Shown piece after piece: positions 6,844 through 62,526 of a stretch of 64,000 nucleotides of DNA. Made by a program: the position numbers and the translations under genes. Below the pieces are notes generated by a model. The model was not told the origin of the DNA. It made no database searches and saw only the letters and a list, made by a program, of their open reading frames with translations. The DNA is from Octopus sinensis (taxonomy: Eukaryota): NCBI RefSeq assembly GCF_006345805.1, contig NC_043001.1:124992001-125056000 (forward strand), in the 5' to 3' direction. Every line of letters begins with the position of its first letter. The stretch's first letter is position 1.

Positions 6844-7286
6844 GAGATTTTATTTTAACAAATTTCATATTTTATTATTTGCATCATTTACTCAATATAT
6901 CAATTCTTCTTTTCTGTAATTTTCTACCCACAACATTAAAAAAAAATAAAGCGAACATTGGAATAAATGTTAAAAATAGGTAAAGAGTTATCTCCACTGG
7001 CAGTCGATATTAACACAGCCTGTACATTTCGTTTCGTCATAGTTACTTACTAACTACTATGGACAAATACATTGAAAGGTTATTTCACACACATTTTGAT
7101 TCTCAGTAGATTAAGGAAATACACAGATCCACTCTCGGATTAAATGCAGCCAGTGCGAAATTTCTGAATTATTACAACAAGGAAACAAGCATTCGTATTT
7201 AAACGACAAATAAGCATATATATTTTTTTCAATTTACTGAAAGCGTAAAATATTGACAAATTGCTGTGATTTACTTCTTTGTATAT

Positions 7287-7344
<58 letters not shown>

Positions 7345-16259: not shown

Positions 16260-16668
16260 AGCGCAGGAGTGGCTGTGTGGTAAGTAGCTTGCTCACATGG
16301 TTCCGGGTTCAGTCCCACTGCGTGGCATCTTGGGCAAGTGTCTTCTGTTATAGACCCGGGCCGACCAATGCCTTGTGAGTGGATTTGGTAGACGTAAACT
16401 GAAAGAAGCCTGTCGTATATATGTATATATATATATATGTATGTGTGTGTATATGTTTGTATGTCTGTGTTTGTCCCCCTGGCATTGCTTGACAACCGAT
16501 GCTGGTGTGTTAACGTCCCCATCACTTAGCGGTTCGGCAAAAGAGACCGATAGAATAAGTACTGGGCTTACAAAAAGAATAAGTTCTGGGGTCGATTTGC
16601 TCGACTAAAGGCGGTGCTCCAGCATGGCCGCAGTCAAATGACTGAAACAAGTAAAAGAGTAAAGAGTA
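16260..16668 (+). mobile_element. SINE family A
   Basis: Homology; tail-to-tail with the next copy. Confidence 0.9.
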
Positions 16669-16713
16669 ACAGTGTAGAAGATACATATTAGCCATCCAAA
16701 AACGAAAATGATT

Positions 16714-17115
16714 CTCTTTTACTTGTTTCAGTCATTTGACTGCGGCCATGCTGGAGCACCGCCTTTAGTCGAGCAAATCGACCCCGGGACTTATTCTTTG
16801 TATGCCCAGTACTTATTCTATCGGTCTCTTTTGCCGAACCGCTAAGTGACGGGGACGTAAACACACCAACATCGGTTGTCAAGCAATGCTAGGGGGACAA
16901 ACACAGACACACAAACATATACACACACACACACTTATATATATATACATATATACGACAGGCTTCTTTCAGTTTCCGTCTACCAAATCCACTCACAAGG
17001 CATTGGTCGGCCCGGGTCTATAGCAGAAGACACTTGCCCAAGATGCCACGCAGTGGGACTGAACCCGGAACCAAGTGGTTGGTTAGCAAGCTACTTACCA
17101 CACAGCCACTCTTGC
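16714..17115 (-). mobile_element. SINE family A
   Basis: Reverse-complement copy. Confidence 0.9.
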
Positions 17116-21281: not shown

Positions 21282-21555
21282 TTCGATTCACTTCAACATT
21301 TAAGTTTAATTTGTCAAAATATTTTCGTCGCTTTAAGACCGCGACCTGTTCGCAGCACGGATTTTTGTCAGTGAACAGGTCGCGGTCTTAAAGCGACGAA
21401 AATATTTTGACAAATTAAACTTAAATGTTAAAGTGAATCGAACAGCTTTTGTGTGTTTCTTAAATGGCTTACAAACACCTTCCACGCTGCAATTGTTTTC
21501 GTTTCAGCACACGATCTCAGATCAAATCACTTGCTATGCAAGTACATCTCCGTAA
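21282..21555 (+). mobile_element. Penelope-like fold-back remnant
   Basis: 70-bp inverted arms (21282-21351 / 21373-21442, one mismatch), a one-sided tail and a hammerhead motif. Confidence 0.65.
21364..21414 (+). ncRNA. Minimal type-I hammerhead motif with G3-C8 core swap
   Basis: TTTGTCA-GTGAACA-G-GTCGC[GGTCTTAAA]GCGAC-GAA-AATATT-T-TGACAAA. Stem I 7 bp, stem II 5 bp, palindromic stem III. Confidence 0.65.
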
Positions 21556-28866: not shown

Positions 28867-30068
28867 TATATCTGATTTCTGCTGTAAAGTGTTAACTAAC
28901 TCCAAAAGCAGTCAAAATGTAACTATTGAAAAGCAGTTAAGGCGATAAATCAAAGAAATTAACTTGTTATTACTTGTCAAATGTGGTTTTTAAAATATCC
29001 ACTATCTAGATTGTCTTAGCTTTTGTTCTTTTCCATGTATCATGATTGTAGGTGCCATTGGTCAAGGAGCTTCTCTCCCTTCTGTTCCACACAATATATT
29101 ATCAAACATATCTTTGTAAGGAGATAGTCAATGGTCTTCTGGTAAGGCCATTGAGTATCTTCTCTCTCTGCTTTCATATGAAGAACATCTGTCAGGTATG
29201 GTTGACCATGCATCTGCATGTATATATACAAGCCAGGATAGGATTTTTTTGAAGGAAACTTAGACTTTCACATGCCTGCAAGTTGCCCCTCTCCATGTTA
29301 TCAATATTTATCTAAGGGGAAAGATTGCCAACTTGGGCTGATAAACTTGGCAAGTGTGACTACAGAAATAGCTTTCAGAATCCAAAGAGCTGGATCAGAT
29401 ACCCCAAGAATTCTTTGTTTGCCATCTAACAATCCTGCCAGTCCACTGCTTTGGATTTTTATCAGCTTTGAGAGGATAAAAAGCAAAGTTCAGCATCACT
29501 GTCATATAAGTTATAGTGTTTGTTTCCTATCTTCTATGGTGTTATATTACTTTGCTTGGAAACAAGTGAAGGATGATGACAGGAATGGTATCCAACCATA
29601 GAAAATCTGCCTCAATAAATACCATCTGGCCCAAGCAATGACAACAATAATGATGATGGTTGCTGTCGATTTATGTAGTAAATGTCAGAGTAGAGAGGCA
29701 AGCTTCTTGTAAAACATGTTGGAACTATTTTGTGTCACTTAAACTGATAATGCCTTTTGAGAATAGCATAATCATATAACTTCATGACTAATTAAGATAC
29801 AAATTTCAATTTGTTAATCACCTAGAAGTCAAACCATCTAAATTGAGCTACCCTAAAATAACTGCTAATTTATTTAAACTTAGCCCTACCTGGACTAACA
29901 TTATCTTTTTGTTGAAATCTGGTTTTAGTTAATTCCAAAAGTTTCTATGAATTTATCAGCATATTTAATATCACAAATATTACGTCTGTTAAATGTTTTC
30001 AAGATATTTTTGTGTTGATATTTGCTTATAATTAATGAATGTTTTTTTATTTTTTATATTGTTTGAAG

Positions 30069-30781
30069 GCTGTCTGAAGGTCATTCAGAGGAGCACCACA
30101 GCAGCAACCGCGATTCTGTTGGAGACACCCGCTCCAGTAGTTGTGGATCGTGTGATGATCATACCATGGATGCTGTATCCTGCGGGAGTGATGCCAGTGA
30201 CTGCTTGCAACCAATTACCATGGAGACAAACCCAATCTTCCAGCACTCTCCTGACAGTGGGACATTTGGGAGCCTAAGGGATGCTGACTTACACATGGCT
30301 CCCTCCGAACTGCAAGAACTGCATCAGCGAAACAAGGATGCACTCTTGCAGCATGAGATTAACATGAACTTGAACCATGGCTTACAATGCATAGATATGA
30401 GCATTGATCAGCATGATATGCATGGTCTTGAAGAAAACGATAACCTTGTGTCTGTTGCCCGGACCCATCTTGATGATAAGCTCAGTGAACAGATTGGCAA
30501 CGGTATTTCAAATGTGGAGTTATTAAAAGCTTGTAAATTAGATTTCCAGCAGAAACTTGACCCCCATTCTTTATCCCTTCCTGTACCCATTCAGAACAGT
30601 GAGCGTAAGAAGCGGCACTGTTCTGTTGAAGACCCTTCATTGGATGCACTTAGTTCCGCTGATAGTGATCTCTCACGTAGCTTACCTCATGGCACCATTG
30701 TACAAAAAGGAGATATGATTGAGTTTATCGCTGACAATTTGGTGGAAAAAATTAAAAGGAGCAGCTCCCTCTCAATGGCAG
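30069..30781 (+). CDS. BORCS6: BORCS6 coding exon 2
   Basis: Polypyrimidine tract and GAAG acceptor ending at 30068. The frame is open upstream of the ORF-track Met at 30166 (LSEGHSEEHH...). It ends with GTIVQKGDMIEFIADNLVEKIKRSS, a block I recognise from invertebrate lyspersins. Donor G|GTAATA at 30782, phase 1. Confidence 0.9.
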
Positions 30782-30927
30782 GTAATATACAAGATGGTTT
30801 GGGGAAGAAAACCCCCTAATTATTTTGATTTTTTTTTTTTTTTTTTTTTTTTCATGTTTCATTGCAACATTTCATTTAGTGTCACATTTTTCACATTCTA
30901 CCTATCATAATAATTGTATAGATTATT

Positions 30928-36708: not shown

Positions 36709-37527
36709 CCACACAGTATCATTCTAAAAATACACAACCACATCATTGAATTTTCAAAGCTACAAAATAATGCGTCAATGAATACTCATTACATTTCACA
36801 GTCAGCTGAATGCTAAAGGGTTGGAGCAGTTCTGAACAGACTACATTTCCAGCTGCTTCCTACTGTCATCGTGGCTCCCTCTTGCTACTGAATCTATCTC
36901 CTTGACTGTGAAGATAGTGTCATTAGGAAATGTGCACCCCCCTCTCCCTCACTCCACTTCCCAACACCATTAGAAAGCTTTATTGCACAGCTGTCTTCAC
37001 CTGCAGTGGGACTCCTGAGTCTCAGGAATGGTCTTTGTGGTGATCAAGATATCAGGTGTATCTGCAATCATGAAATAATGTCACTTCTGTAATTTCTTTG
37101 CCATGAGGCTGCATGGTAGTTGTAGCATAAGTGGTAGTAGTTGCGATTCTCCAATAGCTCACATGGCTGCATTCTTAATTGCTGCTGCTCTTTAAGTACA
37201 GCCATCTATCAATCCACAGTTAAAGTGTGTGTGTGTGTGCCCTTCCTAACGCCAACCACTCCGTGAGTGTAGTGGATGCTTTTTACGTGCCACCTCCAGC
37301 CTCGCCTGGCTCCAGTGCAGGTGGCACGTAAAAAGCATCCACTACACTCACGGAGTGGTTGGCGTTAGGAAGGGCATCCAGCTGTAGAAACATTGCCAGA
37401 TAAGACCGGAGCCTGGTGCAGCCTTCTGACTTCCCAGATCCCCGGTCGAACCGTCCAACCCATGCTAGCATGGAGAACGGACGTTAAACGATGATGATTA
37501 TATATATATATATATATATTATATTCT

Positions 37528-43313: not shown

Positions 43314-44574
43314 TAGCCTTTTTTTTAATACCTTTTCTTGTGTGTGTACATGAACATTGGTATTCCATGCTTAGAAACAGTAATGATGTTGATATTTGGT
43401 ATAGATATTATAACCAATCACTCTGATTTTGAAAACCTCTTGAAAAACAGGTAAGGGTTGGCAGCAGGAAGAGCATCTAGTCATAAACTCGTGCCTTAAA
43501 TAACATCACTGTCCAACTTATGTTATTATGGAAAAACAGATGTAGAACAAAAGAATGAACTAAAAGCTGAGTGAAATAGAAAGAAGATATTGCTAATATA
43601 TTATCTTTTACAAGGGTTTCTGCAACAGCAGTGGGATTCATTCTTACTCTGCTTACTTGGTTAATCAAGAACTGTTGTATTTTGGCATTTACTGCTGATA
43701 AATATTTTTTCTACTCTAGGCACAAGGCCTGAAATTTTTTGGGAGGGGGGGCTGTCCATTAGATCAACCCAAGTACACAACTGGTACTTAATATTTCAAC
43801 TCTGAAGGGATGAAAGGCAAAGTCAACTGCTGATAAATATTGATTTCAAATTTTGGCACAAGGCCAGCAATTTCTGGGGAGGGGATACGTTGATAACATT
43901 GACCCCGGTGTTCAACTGGTACTTATTTTATCGACCCTGAAAGGATGTAAGGCAACTTCAGTGGAATTTGAACTCAGGACACAAAGAGAAATGAAATGCC
44001 ACTAGGCATTTTGCCCAGCACACCAACAATCCTTACTGCTGATAAATATTAAAATTGTAGTTTAGGAGAACAATTTCATGGTCTTGTTTTAAAAACATTA
44101 AGAATGTAGTCTGTCTGTTACAAATGGAAATCAGTTTTATGTAATCCTGATCCTTTATCACATTTTTGATTAATCTCTACTTTTAATGTTTTCTTTATAT
44201 ATTTTATTTTAGTTTTGTGCCTTTCAAACTGATTCACTATCTTTAATTTAATGCATTAGCATTGAACCAATTAACTAATTGATTGATTGATCAACCATTC
44301 AGTCAATCAATCAATCAACTAGGTTGGCCAAAGTTCTGTCTTTGCCATTCTTGATGTCATCAATGACATACCCTCTCTACTCCAGGTCAGCTGTTCTGAA
44401 TGGCGATGAAAGGTCTTTGCCAAACCCAACTGTCTGCCTGATTGACCAAATGATTAATCAAACAATCAATTACTTAATTAGTTAAATTTTAAGAAAATTA
44501 ACTAATAAAAGAAGTGCAATAGAATCTGTGTATATCCTTAATTTACTTTTTTTCTTTTCCTCTCTCCAATGCAG

Positions 44575-44828
44575 ATTCCAGCAGCCTACACACCCGGACA
44601 TCCAGTGTCCAGAGCTTTGGTAGCATCTCCAGCACAAATTCAGCCTACTCTGTCTCGAGAACATCCTACTCAGGCGTGTCTCAGTCACCCAGCAGCTTGG
44701 TGCCACAGAGCCCTGACGACATCCCTCCTGTTGACCCCCATGCCTTAATGGATCTTGAGACTCAAGCCAAACAGGTGGCTGACCGTTTGGACCACATGAT
44801 GTCTAGCCTCAAATCTAATCTTCATAAG
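44575..44828 (+). CDS. BORCS6: BORCS6 coding exon 3
   Basis: TGCAG acceptor after a pyrimidine tract. Phase 1 (G+AT=D). Encodes a Ser-rich linker then IPPVDPHALMDLETQAKQVADRLDHMMSSLKSNLHK, the start of the DUF2365 coiled coil. Donor AAG|GTAAGC. Confidence 0.93.
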
Positions 44829-46283
44829 GTAAGCACCACACTTGAACATAATTCCGTATAATGAGGACTGTTACTTTATTGCAATGTCTCGTAAAAATTG
44901 TGATGACACATGGCCTGATGGTTCGGTTGTTGCACTTCTAATTGCAAAGTGATGGTTTCAGTTTCCTGACTAGGTGGCATGATATGTCCTTCAGCAAGAC
45001 ACTTCATTTCATGTTGCTCCAGTTCACTTCACTGAAAAGGACTTTCATCTGTTACAGAGTGGCACCCTACACCAAAATCTTGTATATGTAAGCTGTCAGC
45101 AGCCCTTGATGGTTACTGGAGGAAAACCAAATGGTCATAATCTATAATACATGCAATACACAAAATATTTCACAAATTTTTTTATACAATTCCTAATAAT
45201 AATATATTTTAAAATGTAATTGGATTTTATTTAAACATCGAATAACTATAGAGGTTCAGTTGAGTAAAGTAGGAATCAAAGTGACCCATAGACAAAAAAA
45301 AATGGTTGAGAAATACTGTTCTGTAGGATGATGCTAATCTGTTGAGGATAACATTCTTAGAACAGTTGGTATTTTTTGCCAAAGGCTTGGTTAACGATGG
45401 CATGTGAAATTTAATCTTTGCCCAAATCATCATCATCATCATCGTTTAGCATCCGCTTTTCATGCTAGCATGGGTTGGACGGTTCAACTGGGGGTCTGGG
45501 AAGCCAGAAGGCTGCACCAGGCCCAGTCTGATCTGGCAATGTTTCTACGGCTGGATGCCCTTCCTAACGCCAACCACTCCATGAGTGTAGTGGGTGCTTT
45601 TTACGTGCCACCGGCACAGAGGCCAGGCGAGGCTGGCAAACAGCCACGATCGGATGGTGTTTTTTACGTGCCACCGTAACGGAGGCCAGGCGAGGCTGGC
45701 AACGGCCACGATCGGATGGTGCTTTTTACGTGCCACCGACACGGAGGCCAGTCAGGGCGGTGCTGGCAACGGCCACGTTCGGATGGTTCTATTATGTGCC
45801 ACCAGCACTGGTATCACAGCTACAATTTCCATTCATGTTGATCGATTTTGATTTTTGCTCGATGATAAATAAACAAGCTGTCAGTCCTCAATATTTGTTA
45901 CAACTACTTGCATCCTTTTAAATCAAAATGGTTTTTTGTTGTCTTTTTTTCATTCAGCATTCTCTTCAATGAGACTATTTTTTCCTTTAATTAGTAAGTA
46001 ATTGGAGGGCATGCTAATGACATTTTACAGACCCTCCCATATTTGGTACATCACTGCAGTTGACATTTAATCTGAACTTTTGGTTAGTGTATCAGACAGG
46101 ACTTTTTGAAATAGAAGGCTCAGGATGTTACACTTCCTCAAAACAAAATAATTTGTTTTGTAAACTCTTTGTACATATTATTTACAGAGGCAAACCATTA
46201 CTAAGTTTACTCAGATTCCCCTTTTGTGTATGCTCTTTCTCTCTCCACCCCCTTCTCTCTCTCATACACATTACTTCTGCCTT

Positions 46284-48236: not shown

Positions 48237-48320
48237 ATGTCTGCCTTGACCTCAGGGTGTTTGGATGCTTATAAAAAATCTGTTGATAGCACCTGTGATG
48301 CAGTTGATGCAAGTATCAAA
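48237..48320 (+). CDS. BORCS6: BORCS6 coding exon 4
   Basis: TTGTAG acceptor, 84 nt encoding MSALTSGCLDAYKKSVDSTCDAVDASIK, donor GTGAGT, phase 0/0. Confidence 0.93.
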
Positions 48321-49324
48321 GTGAGTTTTTGCTGGGTTTTTAATCATTTTAAATTCATTGTTTTTAGGCCTGGATCAAAAGCATTCCAAGACCAAGCCAT
48401 AGTTTTTTTCCCTTGTGTTTACATTATCCTATTTGCTTTGCTACTTTGATATATATATATATATATATATATAGTTATATATATATTATATCATCATCAT
48501 CATTTAACATCTGCTTTCCATGCTGGCATGGGTTGGATGGTTTGACTGAGGGCTGGCAAGCCAGAAGGCTGCACCAGGCTCCAATCTGATCTGGCAAAAT
48601 TTCTACAGCTGGATACCCTTCCTAACGCCAACCACTTTGAGAGTGTAGTGGGTGCCTTTTACATGCCACCGGCATGAGGGCCAGTCGGGTGGTACTGGCA
48701 TCAACCACGCTCAAATGGTGCTTTTTACATGTCACCGGCACAGGAGCCCTTCAGGCGACACTGGCAACAATCACGCTCAAATGGTGCTTTTTACATGCCA
48801 CAGACACAGGAGCTAGTCAGTTGGCACTGGCAACGATCACGCTCAAATGGTGCCTTTAACATGCCACTGGCATGGGTGCCAATCAGGCAGTACTGTCATC
48901 GGCCACAACAACAATTTCACTTGCCTCAACAGCTCTTCGCATGGGCTGGTTATGCAGCACTGGCATAGGCAGTATATATATGTATATATACATACTAGCA
49001 TACTTGCCCGGGTGTTATGACCTACAAGAACATTCTATTATTTGCTCCTTTCTTATGGGCAGAATTGGCACAGCTGATATATACTTAATGGAAGTTATTG
49101 CTTGTTTAATAGTGAAGGGCAAGGGTATAATTTGCATGAAAGTACTATGTATTGTTTCATCATATAAAAGGGGGTTAGTATGATTTTGTCCAGAAATCAC
49201 ATTTTCAATATTTACATTTCTCCCTATCCCCACCGCAATTTCTTAATTTGTAACTTTTTTTCGAATTTTTTTTTTTTGTTACCCACATAGATTACATATC
49301 TGGGAAACATATATATACGTTTAT

Positions 49325-51426: not shown

Positions 51427-51503
51427 TCAATGTATGCACTAATGGCAAAGTGTGAAGAACTAGGCAAATCAATGACTCCAATTTACCAACTGGCAAATCA
51501 AAT
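51427..51503 (+). CDS. BORCS6: BORCS6 coding exon 5
   Basis: TTGCAG acceptor. Encodes SMYALMAKCEELGKSMTPIYQLANQ + AT and ends at the U12-type donor GTATCCTT. Confidence 0.92.
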
Positions 51504-51511
51504 GTATCCTT
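51504..51511 (+). promoter_or_regulatory. U12-type 5' splice site (GTATCCTT)
   Basis: Exact match to the RTATCCTT minor-spliceosome donor consensus at the exon 5 boundary. Confidence 0.9.
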
Positions 51512-51883
51512 CAAACTAATCTGAAACATTTACATATATGTTGGGACAGACAGACAGACTCACAACACACACACAACTCACACACCACACACATGTATGC
51601 ATATTACTGTTGCATTTTGTTGAGTAAATAGCTTATGGTTAAAAAAAAAGTATGTGGTTTACATCTCATCACTGGTACTGGGTTGTGTTGTTTAATGTCA
51701 AAGGTACATAACTTTCAATAAGCTCAATAAAAGCTCAGCTAACTTTGTCGTATGTAGCTAGGTGCTATGAATGCTCAGTCCACCTCAGGAGACGGTTTGT
51801 GCTCTATACAATTTATTATTTGGTACAAAGCCTTTGGGTTGACATAGTCTATGCCTGATCCTTTATAGACTAGATTTCATTAG

Positions 51884-52303
51884 GACACCCATAAAATTAT
51901 CAACCATCTTACAAACAATAACTCTGAGCACCTTTTCTAACTCCACCCGCCTAACACCTGTGGACATATTTACAAAGTCAGAAAACAACACAGCTCCCAT
52001 GACTTTAGGAAACATTTTTTCATGCTGAGAGTTGCTGAAGCATGGAACAAACTGCCGGCATCAGTTGTTAGTTGTCGGAGCACTGCATCCTTCAAAACTT
52101 CCATGCTTTCTGAGATTCGACAACACTACACCTGATTTTCTCCCCTCCATACACATACAAGCATGTATCTGACTCGTACATTGTTCACTTTCCAGACATT
52201 TTTACATTACTTCACATACTTTATATGCACTTTCTGACAAGTTGTGGTGCACCTGAGCACTGTATACAATAATTTCATTATTATTTTTATTATTATTATT
52301 ATA
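51884..52303 (+). mobile_element. CR1-type LINE 3' end, inside the U12 intron
   Basis: Same sequence as 6167-6600 in reverse, with (ATT)n tail. Confidence 0.92.
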
Positions 52304-53387
52304 AGATTAGCATTGTACTGTTTCTACCATATCACACCTCTGAGCACCATATTGTTAATGACTGACTCCTTTAGCTTGCAAAGAATAGACTCCTTCAGGC
52401 TAACTTACAATAAATACTTAGACAAAATATGTACAGGTATGGCTCTGTGGTTATGAAGTTTGCTTTGCAACCATATGGTTCTGAGTTCAGTCCCACTGTG
52501 CAGATCCTTGGGCAAGTGTCTGCTATTATAGCCCTGAGCCAAATAATGCCTTATAAATGAATTTGTTGGGTGAAAATTGTATGGAAGCCCACTGGAAAGC
52601 CAGCGTTGGTTTGTTTACATCCCCGTAAACTTAGAGGTACAGCAAGAGGGATGACTAGAATAAATACCAGACTTAAAAGAATAAGTGCTAGGGTCGATTT
52701 GTTAAAGGTGGTACACCTGCACGGTTGCAGTCTAATGGCTGAAACCGCTAAAAAAATTAGACCAAAAAAATCTGTAGTCAAATTCCAAATATCCAACAGG
52801 TTATGAAACTCCCCACTCACATAGACACAAAACACTGTAGTGAGTCAGTAAACTTCTTGAAGAGGTGCTAGCAACCGTTTTTCTAGAAACAGGTCACATG
52901 GAACGTGGTTCAACCTAGGTGGGCACACTAGTAAAAAAATTCAAGGTAATTTTTTATTAGGCATACCTTAGTGAAAGTCCTCTAGGCTACAGTTTGCATA
53001 TGACTGGCTATCTGCTAGAAATAGCAGTCAAAGCACCTTCATATCACACCTTACTACAATTTTAGTTTCTGTAAAGTTTTGCCTTGGATAGACCAGTGGT
53101 CGAAGTAAGTTGGCCAATATTGAGTGCACAGTGTCTTGTGTTGTTGACAATTATACGAAATGAGAAAAGGTATGAGAGAGAGAGAGTTGCTCTTGGCTCT
53201 GTTTACTAAGGGCTGACTTGACTTAACTTGGTGCTAAACCACAACTATATCTGAGTTACTTGGGATTTTAAAGATAAATGGGGAAAAATATGTTATGTAT
53301 ATGTATTTTATACTGTTGATGTCATAACAATTTTATAAACTTTTGAGAAAATGTAAAATAATTCTTTTTTGGAAGAGTGGATTTCAA

Positions 53388-53616
53388 GCTACCATTGGTT
53401 TCATGTTAAGAGAGAAATCCCTTAATTATCAAGCCTGCCATATGGCAACATTGGTGTTTGGACACTGATGTTCTCATATGGCAGGCTTGATAATTGTTAA
53501 TGGATTTCTGTGACATAAAACCAATGGTAGCCATAACCCATAAATAAAGTATATACATATATATATATTATATATTGGGGGAGGGTAATATCCTTTTTCA
53601 TTGAAAGGAATGTAAT
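53388..53616 (+). repeat. Intronic copy of the 3'UTR hairpin + AATAAA block
   Basis: About 230 bp, near-identical to 55411-55642. Confidence 0.95.
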
Positions 53617-54150
53617 CACCTGTAAATATTGGGTTGAGAAATCTGAGGAGACGTGGGTTCATGACCCACAGACAGCCTTTGACTTTTTCTATCCAAAAGA
53701 GTTTCTCAGCCCAATATTTAAATCTGTGGTCTCTGTGCCGGTGGCACATAAAAAGCACCATCCGATTGTGGCCATTGCCACCTCGCCTGGCCCCCATGCC
53801 TGTGGCACGTAAAAAGCACCATCTGACCATGGCCGTTTGCCAGCCCCATCTGGCACCTAAAAAGCACCCACTACACTCACTGAGTGGTTGGCGTTAGGAA
53901 GGGCATCCAGCCATAGAAACATTGCCAGATCAGACTGGGCCTGGTGCAGCCTTCTGGCTTCCCAGACCCCAGTTGAACCGTCCAGCCCATGCTAGCATGG
54001 AAAGCAGACGCTAAATGATGATGATAATGTTGATGATGTTCTCGACCATTTTTCAATTTTGGACCCTTTTGATTCCTTCTTTGCTCTCTGGACCTCCGTA
54101 GCCAGTAACTGTGTATTAAAAAAATCTTCCTGCATTTTGATCATTAAATC

Positions 54151-54863
54151 GGTGCAGGCATGGCTGTGCGGTAAGAAGCTTGCTTCCCAACCACATGGTT
54201 CTGGGTTCAGTCCCACCATGTGGCACCTTGGGCAAGTGTCTCTTACTGTATATATACACTTATGTGTGTGTCTGTGTTTGCCCTACCCCTCCACTATCAC
54301 CACTTGACAACCAATGCTGGTGTGTTTACGTCCCTGTAATTTAGCAGTTCAGCAAACAGGGCTGATAGAATAAGTACTAGGCTTACAAACAATAAGTCCT
54401 GGGGTTGATTTCTTTGACTAAAAATTCCTTTAGAGCAGTGCTCAGCATGGCTGCAGTCAAATGACTGAAACAAGTAAGAACAATATTATAATGAATAGGA
54501 GTGGCTGTGTGGTAAGTAGCTTGCTTACCAACCACATGGTCCCGGGTTCAGTCCCACTGCGTGGCACCTTAGGCAAGTGTCTTCTACTATAGCCTCGAGC
54601 CAAAACCTTGTGAGTGGATTTGGTAGACGGAAACTGAAAGAAGCCTGTCGTATATATGTATATATATGTAAGTGTGCGTTTGTCCTCCCAACATCGCTTG
54701 ACAACCAATGCTGGTGTGTTTACGTCCCCGTAACTTAGTGGTTCGGCAAAAGAGACCGATAGAATAAGTACTATGCTTCCAAAGAATAAGTCCTGGGGTC
54801 GATTTGCTCGACTAAAGGCGGTGCTCTAGCATGGCCACTGTCAAATGACTGAAACAAAAAGAG
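54151..54863 (+). mobile_element. Two tandem SINE family A copies in the U12 intron (diverged 54151-54478, younger 54496-54863)
   Basis: Homology. Confidence 0.85.
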
Positions 54864-55060
54864 TGTATAAAAAAATCAAAATATTTTGTGTATTGTTGAA
54901 GTGTAACCAATTTATTGTACATAAATTTTAACACGAAAATCTTATTTGGGCCCCAGTTGAGACCACTGATTTACATGCTATTGTATATAGCTTTGTATGC
55001 TTCAAGATCCACTGTTCCAAAAAAAAAATTTTTTCTTTCTTTCCAAACTGTTATACTGTA

Positions 55061-55069
55061 TTCCTTGAC
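55061..55069 (+). promoter_or_regulatory. U12-type branch site (TTCCTTGAC)
   Basis: Matches TTCCTTRAC. The branch A at 55068 is 15 nt from the end of the AG acceptor, with no polypyrimidine tract between them. Confidence 0.88.
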
Positions 55070-55083
55070 TTGTTGTCTCATAG

Positions 55084-55141
55084 AAAGGAGATAAAACGCT
55101 TATTGGATATCTTTGAAAACAAGCTTGTAGACAGATCCTGA
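55084..55141 (+). CDS. BORCS6: BORCS6 coding exon 6 (terminal)
   Basis: CATAG acceptor 14 nt after the U12 branch motif TTCCTTGAC. AT+A gives Ile, then KEIKRLLDIFENKLVDRS*, matching the IKxIKRxLDxFE C-terminus of BORCS6 proteins as I recall it. Confidence 0.9.
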
Positions 55142-55410
55142 GTTTTTCTTTGTTTTTTCACTTTTGTTGCTCGACACTGATAGTTGTTTTTTTTTCTTTT
55201 TTTAACCACCAAAAGAAAAGAAAGACTGAAAAAAAAAGACAAAATGAAACTACAATACTACTACTACTACTATCTGTTACATCTGCTCAGTTAATACTTC
55301 CAGTTATCTCCACTTTCTTTTAGTTTTATATATACATATATATGTTGATATCGAACAGTGAATGCTCAACACTGCATTGGTGGATAAAAATTCTTTATTT
55401 ATGGATTAAG

Positions 55411-55642
55411 GCTACCATTGGTTTCATGTTAAGAGAGAAATCCATTAACAATTATCAAGCCTGCCATATGACAATATTGGTGTTTGAACACTGATGTTCT
55501 CATATGGCAGGCTTGATAATTGTTAATGGATTTCTGTGACATAAAACCAATGGTAGCCATAACCCATAAATAAAGTATATACATATATATATATTATATA
55601 TTGGGGGAGGGTAATATCCTTTTTCATTGAAAGGAATGTAAT
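55411..55642 (+). repeat. 3'UTR long hairpin (55411-55557) + AATAAA block
   Basis: GCTACCATTGGTTT...AAACCAATGGTAGC with a perfect 36-bp central stem. Confidence 0.95.
55569..55574 (+). terminator. Candidate BORCS6 poly(A) signal AATAAA
   Basis: First AATAAA I find after the stop at 55141. U/GU-rich sequence follows at about 55670-55720. Confidence 0.5.
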
Positions 55643-56940
55643 TATATTTATGACATGTCTATCGCTAACATTCTTTTTTTTTTATTCTTCCTGTTGTTGT
55701 TTAATGTTTTTATTTTTTTGTTATTATAAATCTAAATCTACTTACAAATGGAGTTCACTTTATTTTTTGTTGCCTTTAATCATCATTATTATTGTTGTTA
55801 TCAAGGTGGCAGGCTGGCTGAAGCATTAGCATGCTGAACAAAATGCTTAGCAACATTTTGCCCGTCTTTCAAATTCCGCTGAGATTGACTTAGCCTTTTA
55901 TCCTTTCAGAGATGATAAAATAAGTACCAGTTGTGCATTGGGGGTCAATGTAATCGACTTACTCCACTCACTCAAAATTACTGGCCTTGTGCTAAGATTT
56001 GACACCTTTATTTTAATTATTGATAAGGTGGTGAGTTAGTAGAATCACTAGCACCTTGGGCAAAATGCTTAGCGGCATTTTATCTAGGTTCTTATGTTCT
56101 GGGTTCTAATTACACCATGGTCAACTTTGCCTTTCTGCCTTTTGGGGGTTGATAAAATAAGTACCAGTTGAGCACCGGGGTTTATGTAATTGAAACTTCA
56201 GGCCTTGTGTGTGTGTATTAGAAAAGATTATTGTTGATTTTTTTTTGATTTTTTTGATTTTTTTGATTTTTTTTTTATATTATTATTTCGTCTTTCTCCT
56301 TCAAAACATCACATATTTTTATCCCCTCCATTTACTTGCCTGTTTGCTACATTCCCTATGTCTGATTGAAATCCCTTGCAGAATCAAAAAAAAAAAGAAA
56401 AAAAAGTTATTGAAACTCAGACACATTTTGAAACGAACCCTTACACAATGTCAATATTAAATCTGCCGAACTCAGACATACCACAAGCAATAAAACAAAC
56501 CACTCACCATCCTCCTCCTCCTCCTCCTCTTCCTTTAAATCTGCAATGCAACCATAATGATTGGTTATCCTCCTACCTCTGCTCTCTTGTCTAAAACCTA
56601 AAAACTGCAGCCATAATATTGATATTTGTTAAACCAGAATGACAGTTCTTATTACAGTGACTGCTAAATCCTAATACAGCCTCAAAAGTAACTTCTCACA
56701 AACTAAATACTGATAGGGGCATGAAATTTGTCTATTTACAAGCTTCCTAGTAAGTAATATCTGCTGTAACCTCAATGGTGGTTCCTCTTCCCAGTGCAAC
56801 TATTATGATAGTTTGTTCTCTTGTAGATATGATATTGATATTTACTCTTACCGTTTATGTGTGATGACACAGCACTTCCATATCTTGCTATAATTATGAT
56901 TGAACATATTTATCTACAATGAGAAACAGACTGATTTCCT

Positions 56941-57231
56941 TTGTGTGTGTGTGTGTGTGTGTGTATAGACATGGGTATGTGTGTACTTGTATGTGTATAT
57001 ATGTATTTATGTATATATATATATATGTGTGTGTATATATGTATATGTATGTATATATATATATATATATGTATGTGTATATATATATGTATATATGTAT
57101 ATGTATGTATATATATATATATGTATGTATATATATATATGTATATATGTATGTATATATACTTTGATACTTTGATAGGTTTCGACCATTATTGGCCCAG
57201 GCCATGTCTAACTTAATAGCACCACCTGGTA

Positions 57232-57268
<37 letters not shown>

Positions 57269-57578
57269 TATGTATATATGTATGTATGTATATATATATA
57301 TGTATATGTATGTATGTATATATATATATGTATATATATGTATGTATATATATATGTATATATATATGTATGTATATATATATATGTATATATATATGTA
57401 TGTATGTATGTATGTATATGTATGTATGTATGTATGTATATATATATATGTATATATGTATTTATGTATATGTATATATATATATATGTATGTATATATA
57501 TATATGTATGTATGTATGTATGTATATATATATATGTATATATGTATTTATGTATATGTATATATATATATATGTGTG

Positions 57579-57619
<41 letters not shown>

Positions 57620-57981
57620 ATGTGTATATATGTGTATATATGTATATGTGTATATATGTGTGTGTATGTGTATATATGTGTATATATGTATATGTGTATA
57701 TATATATGTATATGTGTATATATGTATTTATGTGTATGTATATATGTATATGTGTATATATGTATTTATGTATATATGTATATGTGTATATATGTATTTA
57801 TGTATATGTGTATATATATGTATATGTGTATATATGTATTTATGTATATGTGTATATATATATATATGTGTGTGTATATATGTGTATGTATGTTTGTGGG
57901 TATATGTATGTATGTATGTGTGTATATATTTGTATGTTGTGTGTGTGTGTATGTATATGTGCACGTATAAGTGTGTATATA
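56941..57981. repeat. About 1-kb compound (TA)/(TG)/(TATG) microsatellite
   Basis: Direct reading, with one unique interruption at about 57165-57232. Confidence 0.97.
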
Positions 57982-59321
57982 CTAGGTGCATTCAAAAAAT
58001 ATCTGACTTTATTTTTTTCCCAAGAAAACTAATGCTGCATGAGTAAAATCCTTTTAGGTGGGAGATGACGCCACCCTTCCTGCTTCAGTTCCCAACTGTT
58101 ACACCTAAGAGTACAGACGTGTAGTGTGCACTCATCAGATTTTCATTTTCACTGAGATGCACCACACAGAGATATTGCATCAAATTTTGCCAAAAGTCTG
58201 GTGGTACTCAAGCTCAAACCATCCAGAAGATTCAGCAGGCCTTTGGTGATGATGCCATGGGAAAAACTCAAATCAAGGTGCAGTACAGCTGATTCAGACA
58301 TGGCTGCAAGTCAGTGAAGCATACTCAGGCAGGCCATCCACAAGCCAAAATGAGGAGCTAATTGAAAAGGTTAAGTGAATAATCCATGGGAGACCAATGT
58401 GTAACAATTGAGGAAATTGCTCATGAAGTGGGAATAAGCACAAGATCAGCGCATTCCATTTTAACGGAGGATTTGTGCATGTGGAGAAGGCGAAATTTTC
58501 CCCCAATGTACTGGCAGAGCAGTAGAAGCAACTCCACATAGAAATCGCTCAGAGCATGCTGGGCTGAGCAAACCATAACCCAGACTTCATGAAAACAATC
58601 ATTACTGGTGATAAGACCCAAGTTTATGGTCTTTGCTCAATGTGTTTGGTCATCTTGTTAGCCATATTCTGAACGCCTTACTTCCCTGGGCATGGATACA
58701 TTGAAACTCCGACGTCTGGCAGCTGACTTGACAGACACCCATAAAATTATCAACCATCTTACAAGCAGTAACTCTGAGCACCTTTTCAAACTCCACCCGT
58801 CTAACACCCGTGGACATATTTACAAAGTCAGAAAACAGCACAACTCCCATGACTTTAGGAAACATTTTTTCACGCTGAGAGTTGCTGAAGCATGGAACAA
58901 ACTGCCGGCATCAGTTGTTAGTTGTCGGAGCACTGCATCCTTCAATACTTCCATGCTTTCTAAGATTCGCCAACACTACACCTGATTTTCTCCCCTCTAT
59001 ACACACACAAGCATGTATCTGACTCATACATTGTTCGCTTTCCAGACATTTTTACATTACTGCATATACTTTATATGCACTTTCAGACGAGTTGTGGTGC
59101 ACCTGAGCACTGTATACAATAATTTCATTATTATTATTATTATAAAAGGACAATCTGATGAGCATGCACTACACGTCTGTACTCAAGGCATAACAACATG
59201 GAAATTTTCATGCATGCACAAGAAGGGTGGCACCACTTCCCACCCAAAGGATTTTGCCTACACAGCATTACTTTTGGCTGGGGGAAAAAATGAAATCAGA
59301 TACGTTTTTGAATGCACCTCA
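57982..59321 (+). mobile_element. Second copy of the same mariner derivative, interrupted by CR1
   Basis: TA-flanked TIRs AGGTGCATTCAAAAA / TTTTTGAATGCACCT. Contains CIKFCQKSGGTQAQTIQKIQQAFGDDAMG. Confidence 0.85.
58661..59143 (+). mobile_element. CR1-type LINE 3' end inserted in a mariner remnant
   Basis: MDTLKLRRLAADL...RQHYT* plus tail. Flanked on both sides by mariner sequence. Confidence 0.92.
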
Positions 59322-59623
59322 TATATGTGTGTATGTGTGATATTGGTTTAAACTTAGGAAATGATAATTTGTGTGGGAGCTACCTTTTTGAGGAATCTGG
59401 CTACTTACAATAAACTACTGAAAGTATTGTTGCTGAGTGTTTATACAAAACAGCTTGGCAAACAAGATGTTTTGCTTTATTTGAAACAAAACATTTTTTG
59501 TTGAATTAGACACACACACATATATATGTATATATATATATATATTTATATCTATCTATATATATATATTTATGATGATGATGATGATCTATCTATATAT
59601 GTATATATATATATATGTATATG

Positions 59624-59875
59624 CTGTTGTGTCTGGGGAGAGTCATTCTCTTTTTGTGCCTTATAATATAACACACTCACCGGTAAAATTTCCACTCTTT
59701 TCTTATTTTTATAAAATAATAGGAAAATAAAAATAAGAAAAGAGTGGAAATTTTACCGGTGAGTGTGTTATATTATAAGGCACAAAAAGAAAATGACTCT
59801 CTCCAGACACAACAGAATATGCTTCAACACACGAACTCATATAAAGAATCGTGCAAACCAAATCCAAAAACGAAA
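59624..59875 (+). mobile_element. Fold-back element related to 49325
   Basis: 89-bp arms (59624-59712 / 59727-59815, two mismatches), 14-nt loop, one-sided tail. No hammerhead retained. Confidence 0.65.
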
Positions 59876-60279: not shown

Positions 60280-61104
60280 ATATCACCCAAAACATGGATA
60301 CTAAAACTGATGGTTATATATGTGTGTATGTGTATTAATTGATAGAAGCACTATATATTGTGGAGACAGAAGTGTTACATAAATTTAGAAATGTGTTCTT
60401 TTACTAAACACATGCATTTTAACCTTTCTGTGAAAACTATAGAATCTCTTTCTGATCAGTAAAACAGATCAACCTGTTAAGTGTCAGCACTATTTACCAC
60501 TTCCTCAGAGATCAGTTACTCATTTTCCTGAGAGGATAGTAGCTTATAACTGTTTATACTCTACACAACCTTGGATAAAACTAAGTTGTTCTGCCCTAGT
60601 TGGGATAATATTACCTTCATTGGCTATGGAAATTACTTAATAGCTGTGAAATATGAGATTAATTAGCTTTATATCTTTTACTGGACACTTTGAGGCAGAG
60701 AAATATAGTTTAATTACATTACCTACTTTTCACAGTAGGGCTAAAAATGTGTGTTTGCTTTACTTATCCATATATGTATGTGTGTGTGTGTGTGGAGAGA
60801 GAGAGACAAAAAAAGAAACACAAAGTTATTGCCAACCTGCAGAGCTGGGTGGGTTTGTTTTTGTTTTTGGGTTCCCCCCCCCCCAAACTTTAAAATTAGT
60901 CATTATATAATAACTACTTTTAAAGAGCTGAAATTCCTCAAAGCTGACATGGGTCTCAGATTGCTTTTTGAACCAGTTTTATTATTGTCTTCAACAACTA
61001 TCGAGCTTTAATACCAAAGCAATACTAAATTTTTATACACATATAATTATGTATGTATGTGTGTGTGTTTTTATATATATATATTTTTATATATATATAT
61101 ATAT

Positions 61105-61233
61105 ACTTTATTTAAAGCAGCAGAGTAACAGGTTTTGTTGAATTTTCTGCTGCTTTAAATAAAACATATTACTCTACCACTGGTATTTGAGTACTCTTTT
61201 TTCCACCTTGTTTCACATTTATGTGTTTACTCC

Positions 61234-61266
<33 letters not shown>

Positions 61267-61430
61267 TTACTTTATTTAAAGCAGCAGAAAATTCAACAAA
61301 ACCTGTTACTCAGAGTAACAGGTTTTGTTGAATTTTCTGCTGCTTTAAATAAAGCATATTACTCTACCACTGGTATTTGAGTACTCTTTTTTCCACCCTG
61401 TTTCACATTTATGTGTTTACTCCGGTATAT
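61105..61430. repeat. Tandemly duplicated fold-back remnant
   Basis: Two direct copies of about 117 bp (61122-61238, 61312-61428). A perfect 42-bp inverted repeat 61270-61311 / 61313-61354 has a 1-nt spacer. Confidence 0.8.
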
Positions 61431-62526
61431 ATATATATATATATATATGATCTTGTGTGGGTGTATGTATGTATATATATCCTAAAAATCTTGGTTTAAT
61501 TTCCCCCCCTGCCGCTGCCAATTTCCCAAGCTATAACATCAAACAATTCAAATTTCTTCTAATGGAAACAAGCTTGGTAACATGAACTTGATGATCCTTT
61601 ACAAGACTGAATACCACTCCAATCGTGTTTCTATCTTAACACTGTTCTGTAATATGTATTGTTAGTACCAGTATAATAAAGAATCAAGTTACTACATAAA
61701 AAAAAAAACACTGGCTGTTTCCTTATTACACAATATCTGCATAAGTAATTCTTTAAATATATTTTCTTGTACTGTTATTATTCATCATCATCATCATCGT
61801 TTAACGTCCGTTCTCCATGCTAGCATGGGTTGGACGGTTCGACCAGGGATCTGGGAAGCCAGAAGGCTGCACCAGGCTCCGGTCTTATCTGGCAATGTTT
61901 CTACAGCTGGATGCCCTTCCTAACGCCAACCACTCCATGAGTGTAGTGGGTGCTTTTTACGTGCCACCTGCACTGGTGCCAGGCGAGGCTGGCATCGGCC
62001 ACGGTCAGATTGGTGCATTTTACATGCCACCTGCACGGAAGCCAGTCGAGGCGGCACTGGCTTCGGCTACGATTCGGATGGTGCTTTTTACGTGCCACCG
62101 ACACGGAAGCCAGTCGAGGCGGCGCTGGCATTGGCCACGATTCGGATATTAAAGTGACAAAACTGGCAGAATCACTAACACCTGTGAAAAAAAGTGTTCA
62201 ACAGCATTTTGTTCCTCTTTATGTTCTGAGTTCAAAGTTCTGTTATGGTTGATGTTACTTTTCATCCTTTCAAGGGTCAGTGAAACAAGTACCAGTCGAG
62301 CACTGAGGTTGATGTACTCAACTTGCCTACTCACCCCAAATTTTAGGCCATGTGTGTATGTTAGAAAGGGTTATATTTCTGCCAAGGTTGACTTTGCCGT
62401 TCATCATTTTGGTGACAGTAAAGTATTTACCAGTTAAGCAATGGGATCAATGTAATCGACTAGACCCTCCCCACAGAATTTTAAGCCTTGTGCCTAAAGC
62501 AGAAAGAATTATTATTATTATTATGT

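What the first reader, a model, noticed from the sequence alone, without database searches (positions are those of the whole stretch)
53388..53616. The 3'UTR hairpin and poly(A) signal are duplicated inside the U12 intron: a possible minor-splicing versus intronic-polyadenylation switch
Seen: 53388-53616 is a near-identical direct copy of 55411-55642, including the long hairpin and AATAAA (53543 versus 55569), with 85 bp identical beyond the hairpin. No other copy occurs in the window and no TSD is evident. The intronic copy lacks the U-rich sequence found downstream of the 3'UTR copy. Inference: slow U12 splicing plus a copied 3'-end module 1.9 kb into the intron could yield a truncated isoform (QMYPSN*) that escapes NMD and carries the same hairpin. 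The left arm of one copy could also pair with the right arm of the other across exon 6, looping out the branch site and terminal exon. A local assembly or haplotype artefact is an alternative explanation.
Basis: partly seen in the sequence, partly recalled or inferred. Interest (0 to 1): 0.72.

Follow-up and report, generated by a model that had tools for sequence, protein, structure and literature searches.

The report
Duplicated hairpin block in octopus BORCS6
A 255-base block holding a long hairpin and an AATAAA motif occurs twice around the last exon of an octopus BORCS6 gene; this is most likely an ordinary local DNA duplication, not a demonstrated splicing/polyadenylation switch.

Summary
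53378-53616 matches 55402-55642 at 232/242 positions, in direct orientation, 2,026 bp apart. The two copies bracket the last coding exon of BORCS6 in an Octopus genome. The intron holding copy A (51504-55083) is a convincing U12-type intron. It is also U12-type at the same position in the snail Bulinus.

The functional story is not supported by anything I could compute:
- The AATAAA is the mirror image of the palindrome's own left end.
- In the 3' copy it is base-paired with probability 0.99.
- The intron carries AATAAA at background density (4 seen, about 4.2 expected).
- Cross-copy pairing gains no energy over each hairpin folding on itself.

No further copy exists in the window or in 122 kb of O. 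vulgaris DNA. The shared sequence runs past the palindrome into its right flank, without a target-site duplication. This fits a local DNA-level duplication, not two transposon insertions.

One oddity remains. All 11 differences lie in the left 100 bp, and the 155 bp from the hairpin apex rightwards are identical. That suggests one-sided gene conversion or asymmetric palindrome decay.

No transcript data or orthologous octopus locus could be reached. Interest is low.

The parts
51427..51503 (+). Penultimate BORCS6 coding exon (SMYALMAKCEELGKSMTPIYQLANQ, split codon AT|A).
   Evidence: Translation and splice junctions. Pfam BORCS6 match of the spliced product.
51504..55083 (+). U12-type (GT-AG) intron, 3,580 nt. 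The 5' splice site is GTATCCTTC at 51504-51512. The branch site is TCCTTGAC at 55062-55069, with the branch A 15 nt before the AG at 55082-55083.
   Evidence: Sequence. It holds the only TCCTTRAY-like motif in the intron. The orthologous Bulinus intron is also U12-type.
51517..51519 (+). In-frame TAA reached if the intron is not spliced. The product would be ...ANQMYPSN*, lacking the conserved C-terminal IKEIKRLLDIFENKLVDRS.
53362..53616 (+). Copy A of the duplicated block, in the intron. The well-aligned part is 53378-53616.
53388..53531 (+). Hairpin A: 144 nt, 62 bp, loop TTGG at 53458-53461, -85.4 kcal/mol.
53543..53548 (+). AATAAA of copy A. Predicted pairing probability is 0.23-0.46.
53462..53616 (+). 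155-nt tract 100% identical to 55488-55642. It starts at the first nucleotide of the right arm.
53588..53596 (+). ATATCCTTT, a perfect AT-AC-type U12 5' splice-site consensus inside the shared tail of copy A.
   Evidence: The motif frequency in the window is at chance.
55084..55141 (+). Coding part of the last BORCS6 exon ((I)KEIKRLLDIFENKLVDRS*, stop at 55139-55141).
55387..55642 (+). Copy B of the block. It begins 246 nt after the stop codon, in the presumed 3'UTR.
55393..55575 (+). Hairpin B: a 183-nt near-perfect palindrome, 83 bp, loop TTGA, -117.0 kcal/mol.
55569..55574 (+). AATAAA of copy B. It is the first canonical hexamer after the stop codon and is paired to 55394-55399 with probability 0.99.
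55614..55622 (+). ATATCCTTT in the tail of copy B.

Best explanation
This is a lineage-specific, near-perfect palindromic (foldback) repeat of about 185 nt, lying about 250 nt downstream of the BORCS6 stop codon in an Octopus genome.

A 255-bp block was copied once at the DNA level. It comprises the palindrome, a few bases of left flank and 67 nt of right flank. The copy sits in the same orientation in the preceding U12-type intron, 2,026 bp away. Which copy is the parent is unknown. The likeliest route is repair- or replication-templated local duplication, of the kind palindromes provoke (inferred).

Afterwards the copies either decayed asymmetrically or were homogenised on one side. The left arm and left end differ by 11 events. 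Everything from the hairpin apex rightwards (155 bp) is identical. This fits a gene-conversion tract starting at or near the apex, or error-prone copying of the far arm (inferred).

In RNA, each copy should fold on itself as it is transcribed, giving long dsRNA. In a mollusc that is more likely an ADAR substrate than a Dicer substrate (inferred). The AATAAA comes along only because it is the mirror image of the palindrome's left terminus.

The duplication is probably neutral. Any use of the intronic hexamer as a poly(A) site would be a by-product. It would yield a BORCS6 lacking its conserved last 19 residues, which amounts to loss of product, not a designed isoform.
For: - The duplication is real and highly significant.
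- Both copies share the same left/right arm asymmetries, so they descend from one already-imperfect palindrome.
- The shared sequence extends beyond the palindrome into non-palindromic flank. It stops at unique sequence on both sides. There is no target-site duplication and no poly(A) tail.
- There is no third copy in the 64-kb window.
- There is no copy in 122 kb from six O. vulgaris loci, where the window's SINE (a short retroposon repeat) gives 36 hits as a positive control.
- All 11 differences lie in the left 100 of 255 bp. Under a uniform model P = 3e-5, or 1e-3 for the conservative block.
- Comparable near-perfect palindromes are frequent in this genome. The window has 21282-21442, 37238-37376, 59592-59847 and 61270-61354; O. 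vulgaris L005 has 6949-7181. One of them shows the same pattern of a nearby second copy with a damaged left arm (61100-61240 vs 61262-61432).
- BORCS6 orthologues of Bulinus, Capitella and Lottia have no 3' hairpin.
- The AATAAA of copy B is fully sequestered in the stem.
- The hexamer density in the intron is at background.
Against: - No reads, transcripts or orthologous octopus loci could be examined. Neutrality, the age of the duplication, and which copy is the parent are therefore inferred, not shown.
- The perfect identity of the right arm, AATAAA and 68 nt downstream, next to a diverged left arm, is also what purifying selection on a shared 3'-end module would give.
- The intronic hexamer is more accessible than the 3'UTR one and has an identical downstream context. 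Some intronic polyadenylation is therefore plausible.
- A sample of 186 kb only bounds the family at roughly fewer than 1 copy per 60 kb.
Confidence: 0.6

Rival explanations
1. The intronic copy is a working poly(A) site. It competes kinetically with slow U12 splicing and gives a regulated, NMD-insensitive truncated isoform (...QMYPSN*) carrying the same hairpin.
For: - The intron is U12-type and its type is conserved.
- Copy A carries AATAAA with the same 68 nt downstream as copy B.
- The copy A hexamer is largely unpaired, at 0.23-0.46.
- That part of the block is perfectly conserved between the copies.
- Premature cleavage and polyadenylation inside a minor intron is documented for human PTEN (PMC13141466).
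Against: - There is no transcript evidence.
- The intron has three other AATAAA and two ATTAAA, at background density.
- The hexamer is a by-product of palindrome symmetry.
- It is unproven that copy B is the gene's poly(A) site. Its hexamer is 0.99 paired, and stabilising a hairpin around AAUAAA inhibits polyadenylation in the HIV-1 system (PMC2645353).
- The truncated product would lose the most conserved C-terminal helix segment.
- Other molluscan or annelid orthologues have no such hairpin.
Confidence: 0.07
2. Two independent insertions of one low-copy transposable element, a MITE-like palindrome with a short tail, that landed 2 kb apart by chance.
For: - The core is a near-perfect palindrome with A/T-rich termini, as in MITEs and foldback elements.
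- The locus is packed with repeats.
- Genuine short dispersed repeats associated with palindromes exist in this genome.
Against: - There is no target-site duplication at either copy.
- The shared sequence runs 67 nt past the right terminal inverted repeat, while the left side ends at the repeat.
- No other copy was found in 64 + 122 kb. There were also no related ORF hits.
- The two copies have the same orientation, lie 2 kb apart and share 155 bp of perfect identity. That requires coincidence on top of a very recent insertion.
Confidence: 0.12
3. An assembly, polishing or haplotype artefact. Only one copy exists in the animal, or the perfect 155-bp identity was created by consensus polishing across repeats.
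For: The two copies are unusually identical over their right 155 bp while differing on the left. Palindromes are hard to sequence and assemble.
Against: - The window has no Ns.
- Both copies are embedded in unique, different flanks.
- The 1.77 kb between them, which includes the conserved last exon, is not duplicated. It is therefore not a tandem haplotig duplication.
- Copy A has its own private substitutions and indels, so distinct reads must exist.
Confidence: 0.06
4. Cross-copy RNA pairing. The left arm of one copy pairs with the right arm of the other, looping out the branch site and terminal exon to control splicing.
For: The arms are mutually complementary across copies. The duplex energies are -89.3 and -117.4 kcal/mol.
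Against: - The cross-copy duplexes have exactly the same energy as the intra-copy ones, because the right arms are identical.
- The local hairpins close a 4-nt loop and can form as soon as they are transcribed. The cross pairing must close a loop of about 2 kb and displace them.
Confidence: 0.02
5. The hairpins are duplicated small-RNA genes (miRNA or hairpin-siRNA precursors) hosted in BORCS6.
For: Rfam miRNA models give weak hits on both copies: MIR5649 at 50.9 bits and mir-2012 at 42.7 and 32.6 bits.
Against: - All hits are far below the gathering scores of 90-100, and they come from unrelated plant and animal families. This is the generic response to a long perfect stem.
- Stems of 62-83 bp are not miRNA-like.
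- A survey found no evidence of a dedicated endo-siRNA pathway in molluscs (PMC12479628).
Confidence: 0.03

Closest known systems
Small local (dispersed, non-tandem) segmental duplications and gene conversion associated with palindromes or foldback repeats.
   Same: Two direct copies lie a few kb apart, with unique flanks, no target-site duplication and a sharp identity boundary. The window holds several other near-perfect palindromes, one with a neighbouring partial copy.
   Different: The mechanism is inferred from the sequence pattern only. The donor and the direction are unknown. The coincidence of the identity boundary with the hairpin apex is resolved only to about 15 nt.
MITEs and foldback transposable elements.
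   Same: A short, non-coding, near-perfect inverted repeat with A/T-rich ends, located in an intron or UTR.
   Different: It has no target-site duplication. No other copies were found in 186 kb. The duplicated unit is not bounded by the inverted repeat on the right.
Premature cleavage and polyadenylation inside a minor intron (human PTEN intron 1, the PINC lncRNA; PMC13141466).
   Same: It is the same concept: a poly(A) signal inside an inefficiently spliced U12-type intron can terminate transcripts.
   Different: Here there is only a hexamer with a copied context and no 3'-end evidence. It is the last intron, not the first. The signal arrived with a duplicated palindrome.
Inverted-repeat dsRNA in 3'UTRs (for example inverted Alu pairs) as ADAR substrates. 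This comparison rests on my own knowledge.
   Same: A long intramolecular duplex lies in the presumed 3'UTR and in an intron of a protein-coding gene. Molluscan dsRNA has been suggested to be handled by editing and not by Dicer (PMC12479628).
   Different: This is a single compact palindrome, not two separate repeats. No editing data were available.
Structural occlusion of AAUAAA (the HIV-1 polyA hairpin; PMC2645353).
   Same: The hexamer of copy B lies in a stable stem, with pairing probability 0.99.
   Different: The stem here is far longer. No functional data exist. It is a resemblance in how it might work, not membership of that system.
The USSE, the U11-binding splicing enhancer of the U11-48K and U11/U12-65K genes (PMC5473595).
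   Same: A perfect U12-type 5' splice-site consensus (ATATCCTTT) that is not an obvious splice site lies in the 3' region of a gene and in an intron.
   Different: The USSE is a tandem pair of such sites. Here there is one per copy, and the motif frequency in the window is at chance.

Membership tests
U12-type (minor) intron | 5' splice site matching /RTATCCTTT. | tested here: met
   GTATCCTTC at 51504-51512, 8 of 9 positions. The other BORCS6 introns in the window start GTAATA, GTAAGC and GTGAGT.
U12-type (minor) intron | Branch site TCCTTRAY about 10-15 nt upstream of the 3' splice site. | tested here: met
   TCCTTGAC at 55062-55069, with the branch A 15 nt before the AG at 55083. It is the only such motif in the intron.
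U12-type (minor) intron | The intron type is conserved at the orthologous position. | tested here: met
   Bulinus truncatus L003 has the same position and phase, with GTATCCTTAT and TCCTCAAC about 11 nt before the AG. Capitella has the intron as a 65-nt U2-type GTAAGT intron. Lottia lacks it.
U12-type (minor) intron | Removal by the U11/U12-dependent spliceosome. | not testable with these tools
   This needs RNA data or knock-down experiments.
Functional cleavage/polyadenylation site | AAUAAA or AUUAAA hexamer. | tested here: met
   Hexamers at 53543 and 55569. However, 75 AATAAA occur on the + strand of the window, including 4 in this intron.
Functional cleavage/polyadenylation site | The hexamer is accessible (single-stranded). 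| tested here: not met
   Copy B is paired with probability 0.99. Copy A is paired with probability 0.23-0.46. These are predictions only.
Functional cleavage/polyadenylation site | A U- or GU-rich element within about 40 nt after the cleavage site. | tested here: inconclusive
   Both copies have a UA-repeat, then UGGGGGAGGG and CCUUUUUC. The strong T-rich tract lies only after copy B and is more than 100 nt away.
Functional cleavage/polyadenylation site | Mapped poly(A)-tailed 3' ends. | not testable with these tools
   No octopus transcript data could be reached.
MITE / foldback transposable element | Terminal inverted repeats. | tested here: met
   Copy B is a 183-nt palindrome with 83 bp paired.
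MITE / foldback transposable element | Target-site duplication flanking the element. | tested here: not met
   The flanks of B are ...AAAAATT | ... | TATATAC. The flanks of A show only an offset TGTAAA similarity in A/T-rich sequence.
MITE / foldback transposable element | Multiple dispersed copies with the same ends. | tested here: inconclusive
   No further copies in the window or in 122 kb of O. vulgaris, against 36 hits for the SINE (short retroposon repeat) control. No peptide-level relatives. The whole genome was not searchable.
Processed retrocopy of the mRNA 3' end | The copy ends at the cleavage site with a poly(A) tract. | tested here: not met
   The shared sequence runs 68 nt past the AATAAA and is followed by CACCTGTAAAT, with no A-run.
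miRNA precursor families (Rfam MIR5649, mir-2012, mir-1743) | A score at or above the family's gathering threshold. | tested here: not met
   Scores of 50.9, 42.7 and 24.7 bits against thresholds of 100, 90 and 100.
USSE (U11-binding splicing enhancer) | A tandem repeat of U12-type 5' splice-site sequences. | tested here: not met
   There is a single ATATCCTTT per copy. The definition is taken from PMC5473595.
LTR pair of a retroelement | The direct repeats enclose element-internal sequence. | tested here: not met
   The sequence between the copies holds SINE (short retroposon repeat) copies, the conserved U12 3' splice site and the last BORCS6 exon.

The most novel reading that the evidence does not exclude
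A recent duplication put a copy of the gene's own terminal hairpin-plus-poly(A) block into a deeply conserved U12-type intron. The copied AAUAAA, unlike the original, is no longer buried in the stem. It works as a kinetic timer: when minor splicing is slow, transcripts end in the intron and BORCS6 output falls. The perfect identity of the right arm, the hexamer and the downstream 68 nt, which includes a U11-binding consensus ATATCCTTT, would then reflect selection and not gene conversion.
Probability: 0.06. Interest if true: 0.6.

Novelty: new member of a known kind. Interest (0 to 1): 0.2.

Why it matters
If it is only a neutral duplication, it matters little. It is one more example of how palindromic repeats spread and decay locally in repeat-rich cephalopod genomes. 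It also places direct repeats around a conserved terminal exon, which is a potential deletion hazard.

It would matter more if the intronic copy were used. It would then be a natural case in which a poly(A) site born by duplication competes with minor-intron splicing, outside vertebrates.

A useful by-product is the finding that the last BORCS6 intron is U12-type in both Octopus and Bulinus, U2-type in Capitella and lost in Lottia.

Tried and rejected
- **Orthologous octopus locus.** The BORCS6 protein search returned no cephalopod protein. Exact look-ups of window ORFs over both copies and over exon 1 found nothing.
- **Genome-wide copy number.** A 20-mer scan of metagenome contigs gave one bacterial chance hit. 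A peptide search with the palindrome ORF found no candidates. The substitute was 122 kb of O. vulgaris around SINE-derived (short retroposon repeat) gene models, which held no copy.
- **Homology to the 83-bp dispersed repeat.** That repeat also ends in CTTTATTTA/TAAATAAAG (61153-61242, 61343-61432, L005:6752-6839). The homology is rejected: alignment score 10 against a null mean of 9, p = 0.3. The weak 58% match at 8105-8282 is also rejected.
- **Retrocopy of an ADAR-edited 3'UTR.** Three of the four substitutions are A>G or T>C in the B-to-A direction. There are too few to exceed the normal transition bias, there is no poly(A) tail, and the copy overshoots any plausible cleavage site.
- **miRNA, tRNA or SINE origin.** Rfam hits are below threshold and ARAGORN found nothing.
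- **A second U12 intron using ATATCCTTT at 55614.** There is no branch-site motif downstream within the window.
- **More homology beyond the block, interrupted by transposon insertions.** None was found.

Full report
**Observation**

The direct repeat is real. BLASTN aligns 53378-53616 with 55402-55642 at 232/242 identities (E 1e-112), on the same strand, with a start-to-start distance of 2,026 bp. A looser global alignment carries weak homology left to about 53362/55387, giving a block of about 255 bp.

Each copy folds into a very stable hairpin:
- A: 53388-53531, 62 bp, -85.4 kcal/mol.
- B: 55393-55575, 83 bp, -117.0 kcal/mol.
- The shuffle z-scores of the 271-nt contexts are -10 and -16.

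AATAAA lies at 53543 and 55569. No third copy exists in the window. The read-through frame ...ANQMYPSN* is correct, with the stop at 51517-51519. The one addition is that copy B's palindrome is longer and includes the AATAAA in its outermost 12 bp.

**Context**

The spliced exons give a full-length match to Pfam BORCS6 (PF10157, E 2e-42). The exons are approximately 44562-44838, 48237-48321, 51427-51503 and 55084-55141. The best protein relatives are molluscan, with Bulinus and Lottia at 67% identity.

The abundant SINE (a short retroposon repeat) in the window hits almost only Octopus vulgaris gene models, at up to 84% identity. The window therefore comes from an Octopus genome.

The intron 51504-55083 has a U12-type 5' splice site (GTATCCTTC). 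It has a single U12-type branch site (TCCTTGAC, 55062-55069) whose branch A lies 15 nt before the AG.

In other species the same intron behaves as follows:
- In Bulinus truncatus the intron position and phase are the same, with GTATCCTTAT and TCCTCAAC about 11 nt before the AG.
- In Capitella teleta the intron is there but is a 65-nt GTAAGT intron.
- In Lottia it is absent.

The 'U12 intron' premise is therefore well supported.

**Anatomy of the block**

Copy B is a 183-nt near-perfect palindrome. Its termini are CTTTATTTATGG and CCATAAATAAAG. The AATAAA is therefore the reverse complement of the left terminus. It is present by symmetry, not as a separate signal.

The shared sequence continues 67 nt to the right of the palindrome (TATATACATATATATATATTATATATTGGGGGAGGGTAATATCCTTTTTCATTGAAAGGAATGTAAT). 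It stops abruptly at unique sequence in both copies. A SINE starts only at 53727 and at about 55775.

Both copies share the same imperfections between left and right arm, for example the 3-nt bulge TTAAGAGAG against TCACAG. They therefore descend from one already-asymmetric palindrome.

There is no poly(A) tract and no convincing target-site duplication. BORCS6 orthologues in Bulinus, Capitella and Lottia have no comparable hairpin downstream of the stop codon. The element is therefore lineage-specific.

**Is it a transposon family?**

I could not search a whole octopus genome. The indirect tests were:
- The window holds no other copy.
- Six O. vulgaris loci totalling 122 kb hold none. The window's SINE gives 36 hits there as a positive control.
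- A peptide search with the ORF that crosses the palindrome found no candidate.
- A 20-mer scan of metagenome contigs found only a bacterial chance match.

This bounds the family at roughly fewer than one copy per 60 kb. It does not exclude a low-copy family. Even so, several features favour a single local DNA-level duplication over two independent insertions: the 2-kb proximity, the same orientation, the absence of a target-site duplication, and a shared segment that overshoots the inverted repeat on one side.

Near-perfect palindromes are common here:
- 21282-21442
- 37238-37376, an inverted duplication of SINE sequence
- 59592-59847
- 61270-61354
- O. vulgaris L005:6949-7181

At 61100-61432 a palindrome again sits next to a second copy whose left arm is damaged. 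This kind of local event therefore seems routine in this genome.

**An unexplained detail**

All 11 differences between the copies (7 indels, 4 substitutions) lie in the left 100 bp. The identical run 53462-53616 begins at the first nucleotide of the right arm, directly after the loop TTGG at 53458-53461. Under a uniform model P = 3e-5, or 1e-3 if only 53388-53616 is counted.

Judged against the right arm, each copy carries at least one derived substitution. The left halves have therefore truly diverged, while the right halves have not.

The simplest readings are:
- a one-sided gene-conversion tract starting at or near the hairpin apex (a break at a hairpin tip repaired from the other copy);
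- error-prone copying of the distal arm during the duplication;
- consensus polishing across repeats.

Selection on the right arm plus AATAAA plus downstream sequence would give the same picture and cannot be excluded.

**RNA-level evaluation of the proposed switch**

1. AATAAA occurs 75 times on the + strand of the window (1.17 per kb). The 3.58-kb intron has four (51726, 52409, 52659, 53543) plus two ATTAAA, exactly the background.
2. After the stop codon, the hexamer inside hairpin B is the only canonical one until 56456/56489. It is plausible as the gene's poly(A) signal, but that is unproven.
3. In partition-function folds with 300-1150 nt of context, the copy B hexamer is paired with probability 0.99, to 55394-55399. 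The copy A hexamer is paired at 0.23-0.46, because copy A has lost the matching left terminus. Stabilising a hairpin that contains AAUAAA inhibits polyadenylation in the HIV-1 system (PMC2645353). If anything, the intronic copy is the more accessible one.
4. The T-rich tract unique to copy B lies more than 100 nt past the hexamer. That is too far to be the core downstream element, and the first 68 nt are identical in both copies.
5. A product ending ...QMYPSN* would lack IKEIKRLLDIFENKLVDRS, the most conserved end of the BORCS6 helix. Intronic termination would reduce functional output, not create a new functional isoform.
6. Cross-copy duplexes have the same energies as intra-copy ones: -89.3 kcal/mol for the A left arm and -117.4 kcal/mol for the B left arm, with either right arm. 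There is no enthalpic reason to form a 2-kb loop in place of a 4-nt loop.

**Explanation and rivals**

- **Best explanation (0.6).** A local, probably neutral, DNA-level duplication of a foldback repeat with its flank, followed by asymmetric decay or one-sided conversion. Each copy folds on itself in RNA and is at most a dsRNA (ADAR) substrate. A survey found no evidence of a dedicated endo-siRNA pathway in molluscs and suggested editing as the fate of dsRNA (PMC12479628).
- **Two insertions of a low-copy element (0.12).**
- **Assembly or polishing artefact (0.06).**
- **Small-RNA genes (0.03).**
- **Cross-copy looping (0.02).**

**Comparison with what is known**

The idea of premature polyadenylation inside a minor intron is already documented for human PTEN (PMC13141466). 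The present locus would be at most a new instance, born by duplication.

It fails membership tests for several families:
- MITE: no target-site duplication, ends not coincident, and no other copies found.
- Retrocopy: no A-tail, and it overshoots the cleavage zone.
- Rfam miRNA families: 24.7-50.9 bits against thresholds of 90-100.
- USSE: a single motif, not a tandem U12 5' splice-site motif (PMC5473595).

**Verdict**

The functional interpretation is unproven and weakened. Novelty: a new member of a known kind (small palindrome-associated local duplication). Interest is low (0.2). The most novel reading not excluded is the switch model, with probability about 0.06.

They are whole-genome copy number, orthologous octopus loci, long reads and 3'-end or long-read transcripts.

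Noticed in passing
window 53588-53596 and 55614-55622 (+): The shared tail of both copies contains ATATCCTTT, a perfect AT-AC-type U12 5' splice-site consensus, about 40 nt after the AATAAA. The motif frequency in the window is at chance (3 matches against 1.73 expected). No U12 branch-site motif follows copy B within the window.
   Followed up: partly
window 51504-55083; L003 about 5903-7550; L004 about 5627-5691; L002 2487-2528: The last BORCS6 intron is U12-type in this Octopus and in Bulinus truncatus. It is a 65-nt U2-type intron at the same position in Capitella teleta and is absent in Lottia gigantea. The Capitella database protein (P0004) ends ...QEQM, which means it was truncated by reading into this intron.
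   Followed up: yes
window 53462-53616 vs 55488-55642: All 11 differences between the copies lie left of the hairpin apex, and the 155 bp from the apex rightwards are identical (P about 3e-5 under a uniform model). Possible causes are apex-initiated gene conversion, asymmetric palindrome decay or polishing.
   Followed up: partly
window 21282-21442, 37238-37376, 59592-59847, 61270-61354, 16294-17077; L005 6949-7181: There are several other long near-perfect palindromes or inverted duplications, with arms of 42-281 nt at 88-100% complementarity and short spacers. Some are built from SINE (short retroposon repeat) sequence. They appear to be a common feature of Octopus DNA.
   Followed up: partly
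window 61100-61432; L005 6752-6839: An 83-bp dispersed repeat (CTTTAAATAAAGCATATTACTCTACC...CTCCGG) is flanked by (TA)n. It occurs twice in tandem in the window and once in O. vulgaris at 96.6% identity. One window copy carries an 85-nt perfect palindrome at its end. The other carries the same palindrome with the inner left arm deleted.
   Followed up: partly
window 53623-53641 and 53702-53720: A 19-nt inverted repeat (TAAATATTGGGTTGAGAAA / TTTCTCAGCCCAATATTTA, one mismatch) lies immediately 3' of copy A, in sequence that is unique within the window. A SINE begins at 53727.
   Followed up: no
window 56840-58050: A compound (TA)n/(TATG)n/(TG)n microsatellite field of about 1.2 kb lies about 1.3 kb downstream of copy B. 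It gives spurious sub-threshold Rfam miRNA hits (mir-297, mir-1277).
   Followed up: no
window 30066-30787: A large N-terminal coding exon of BORCS6 (...LPHGTIVQKGDMIEFIADNLVEKIKRSSSLSMA) is followed by a 13.8-kb intron. The start codon, and whether an upstream exon exists, were not resolved.
   Followed up: no
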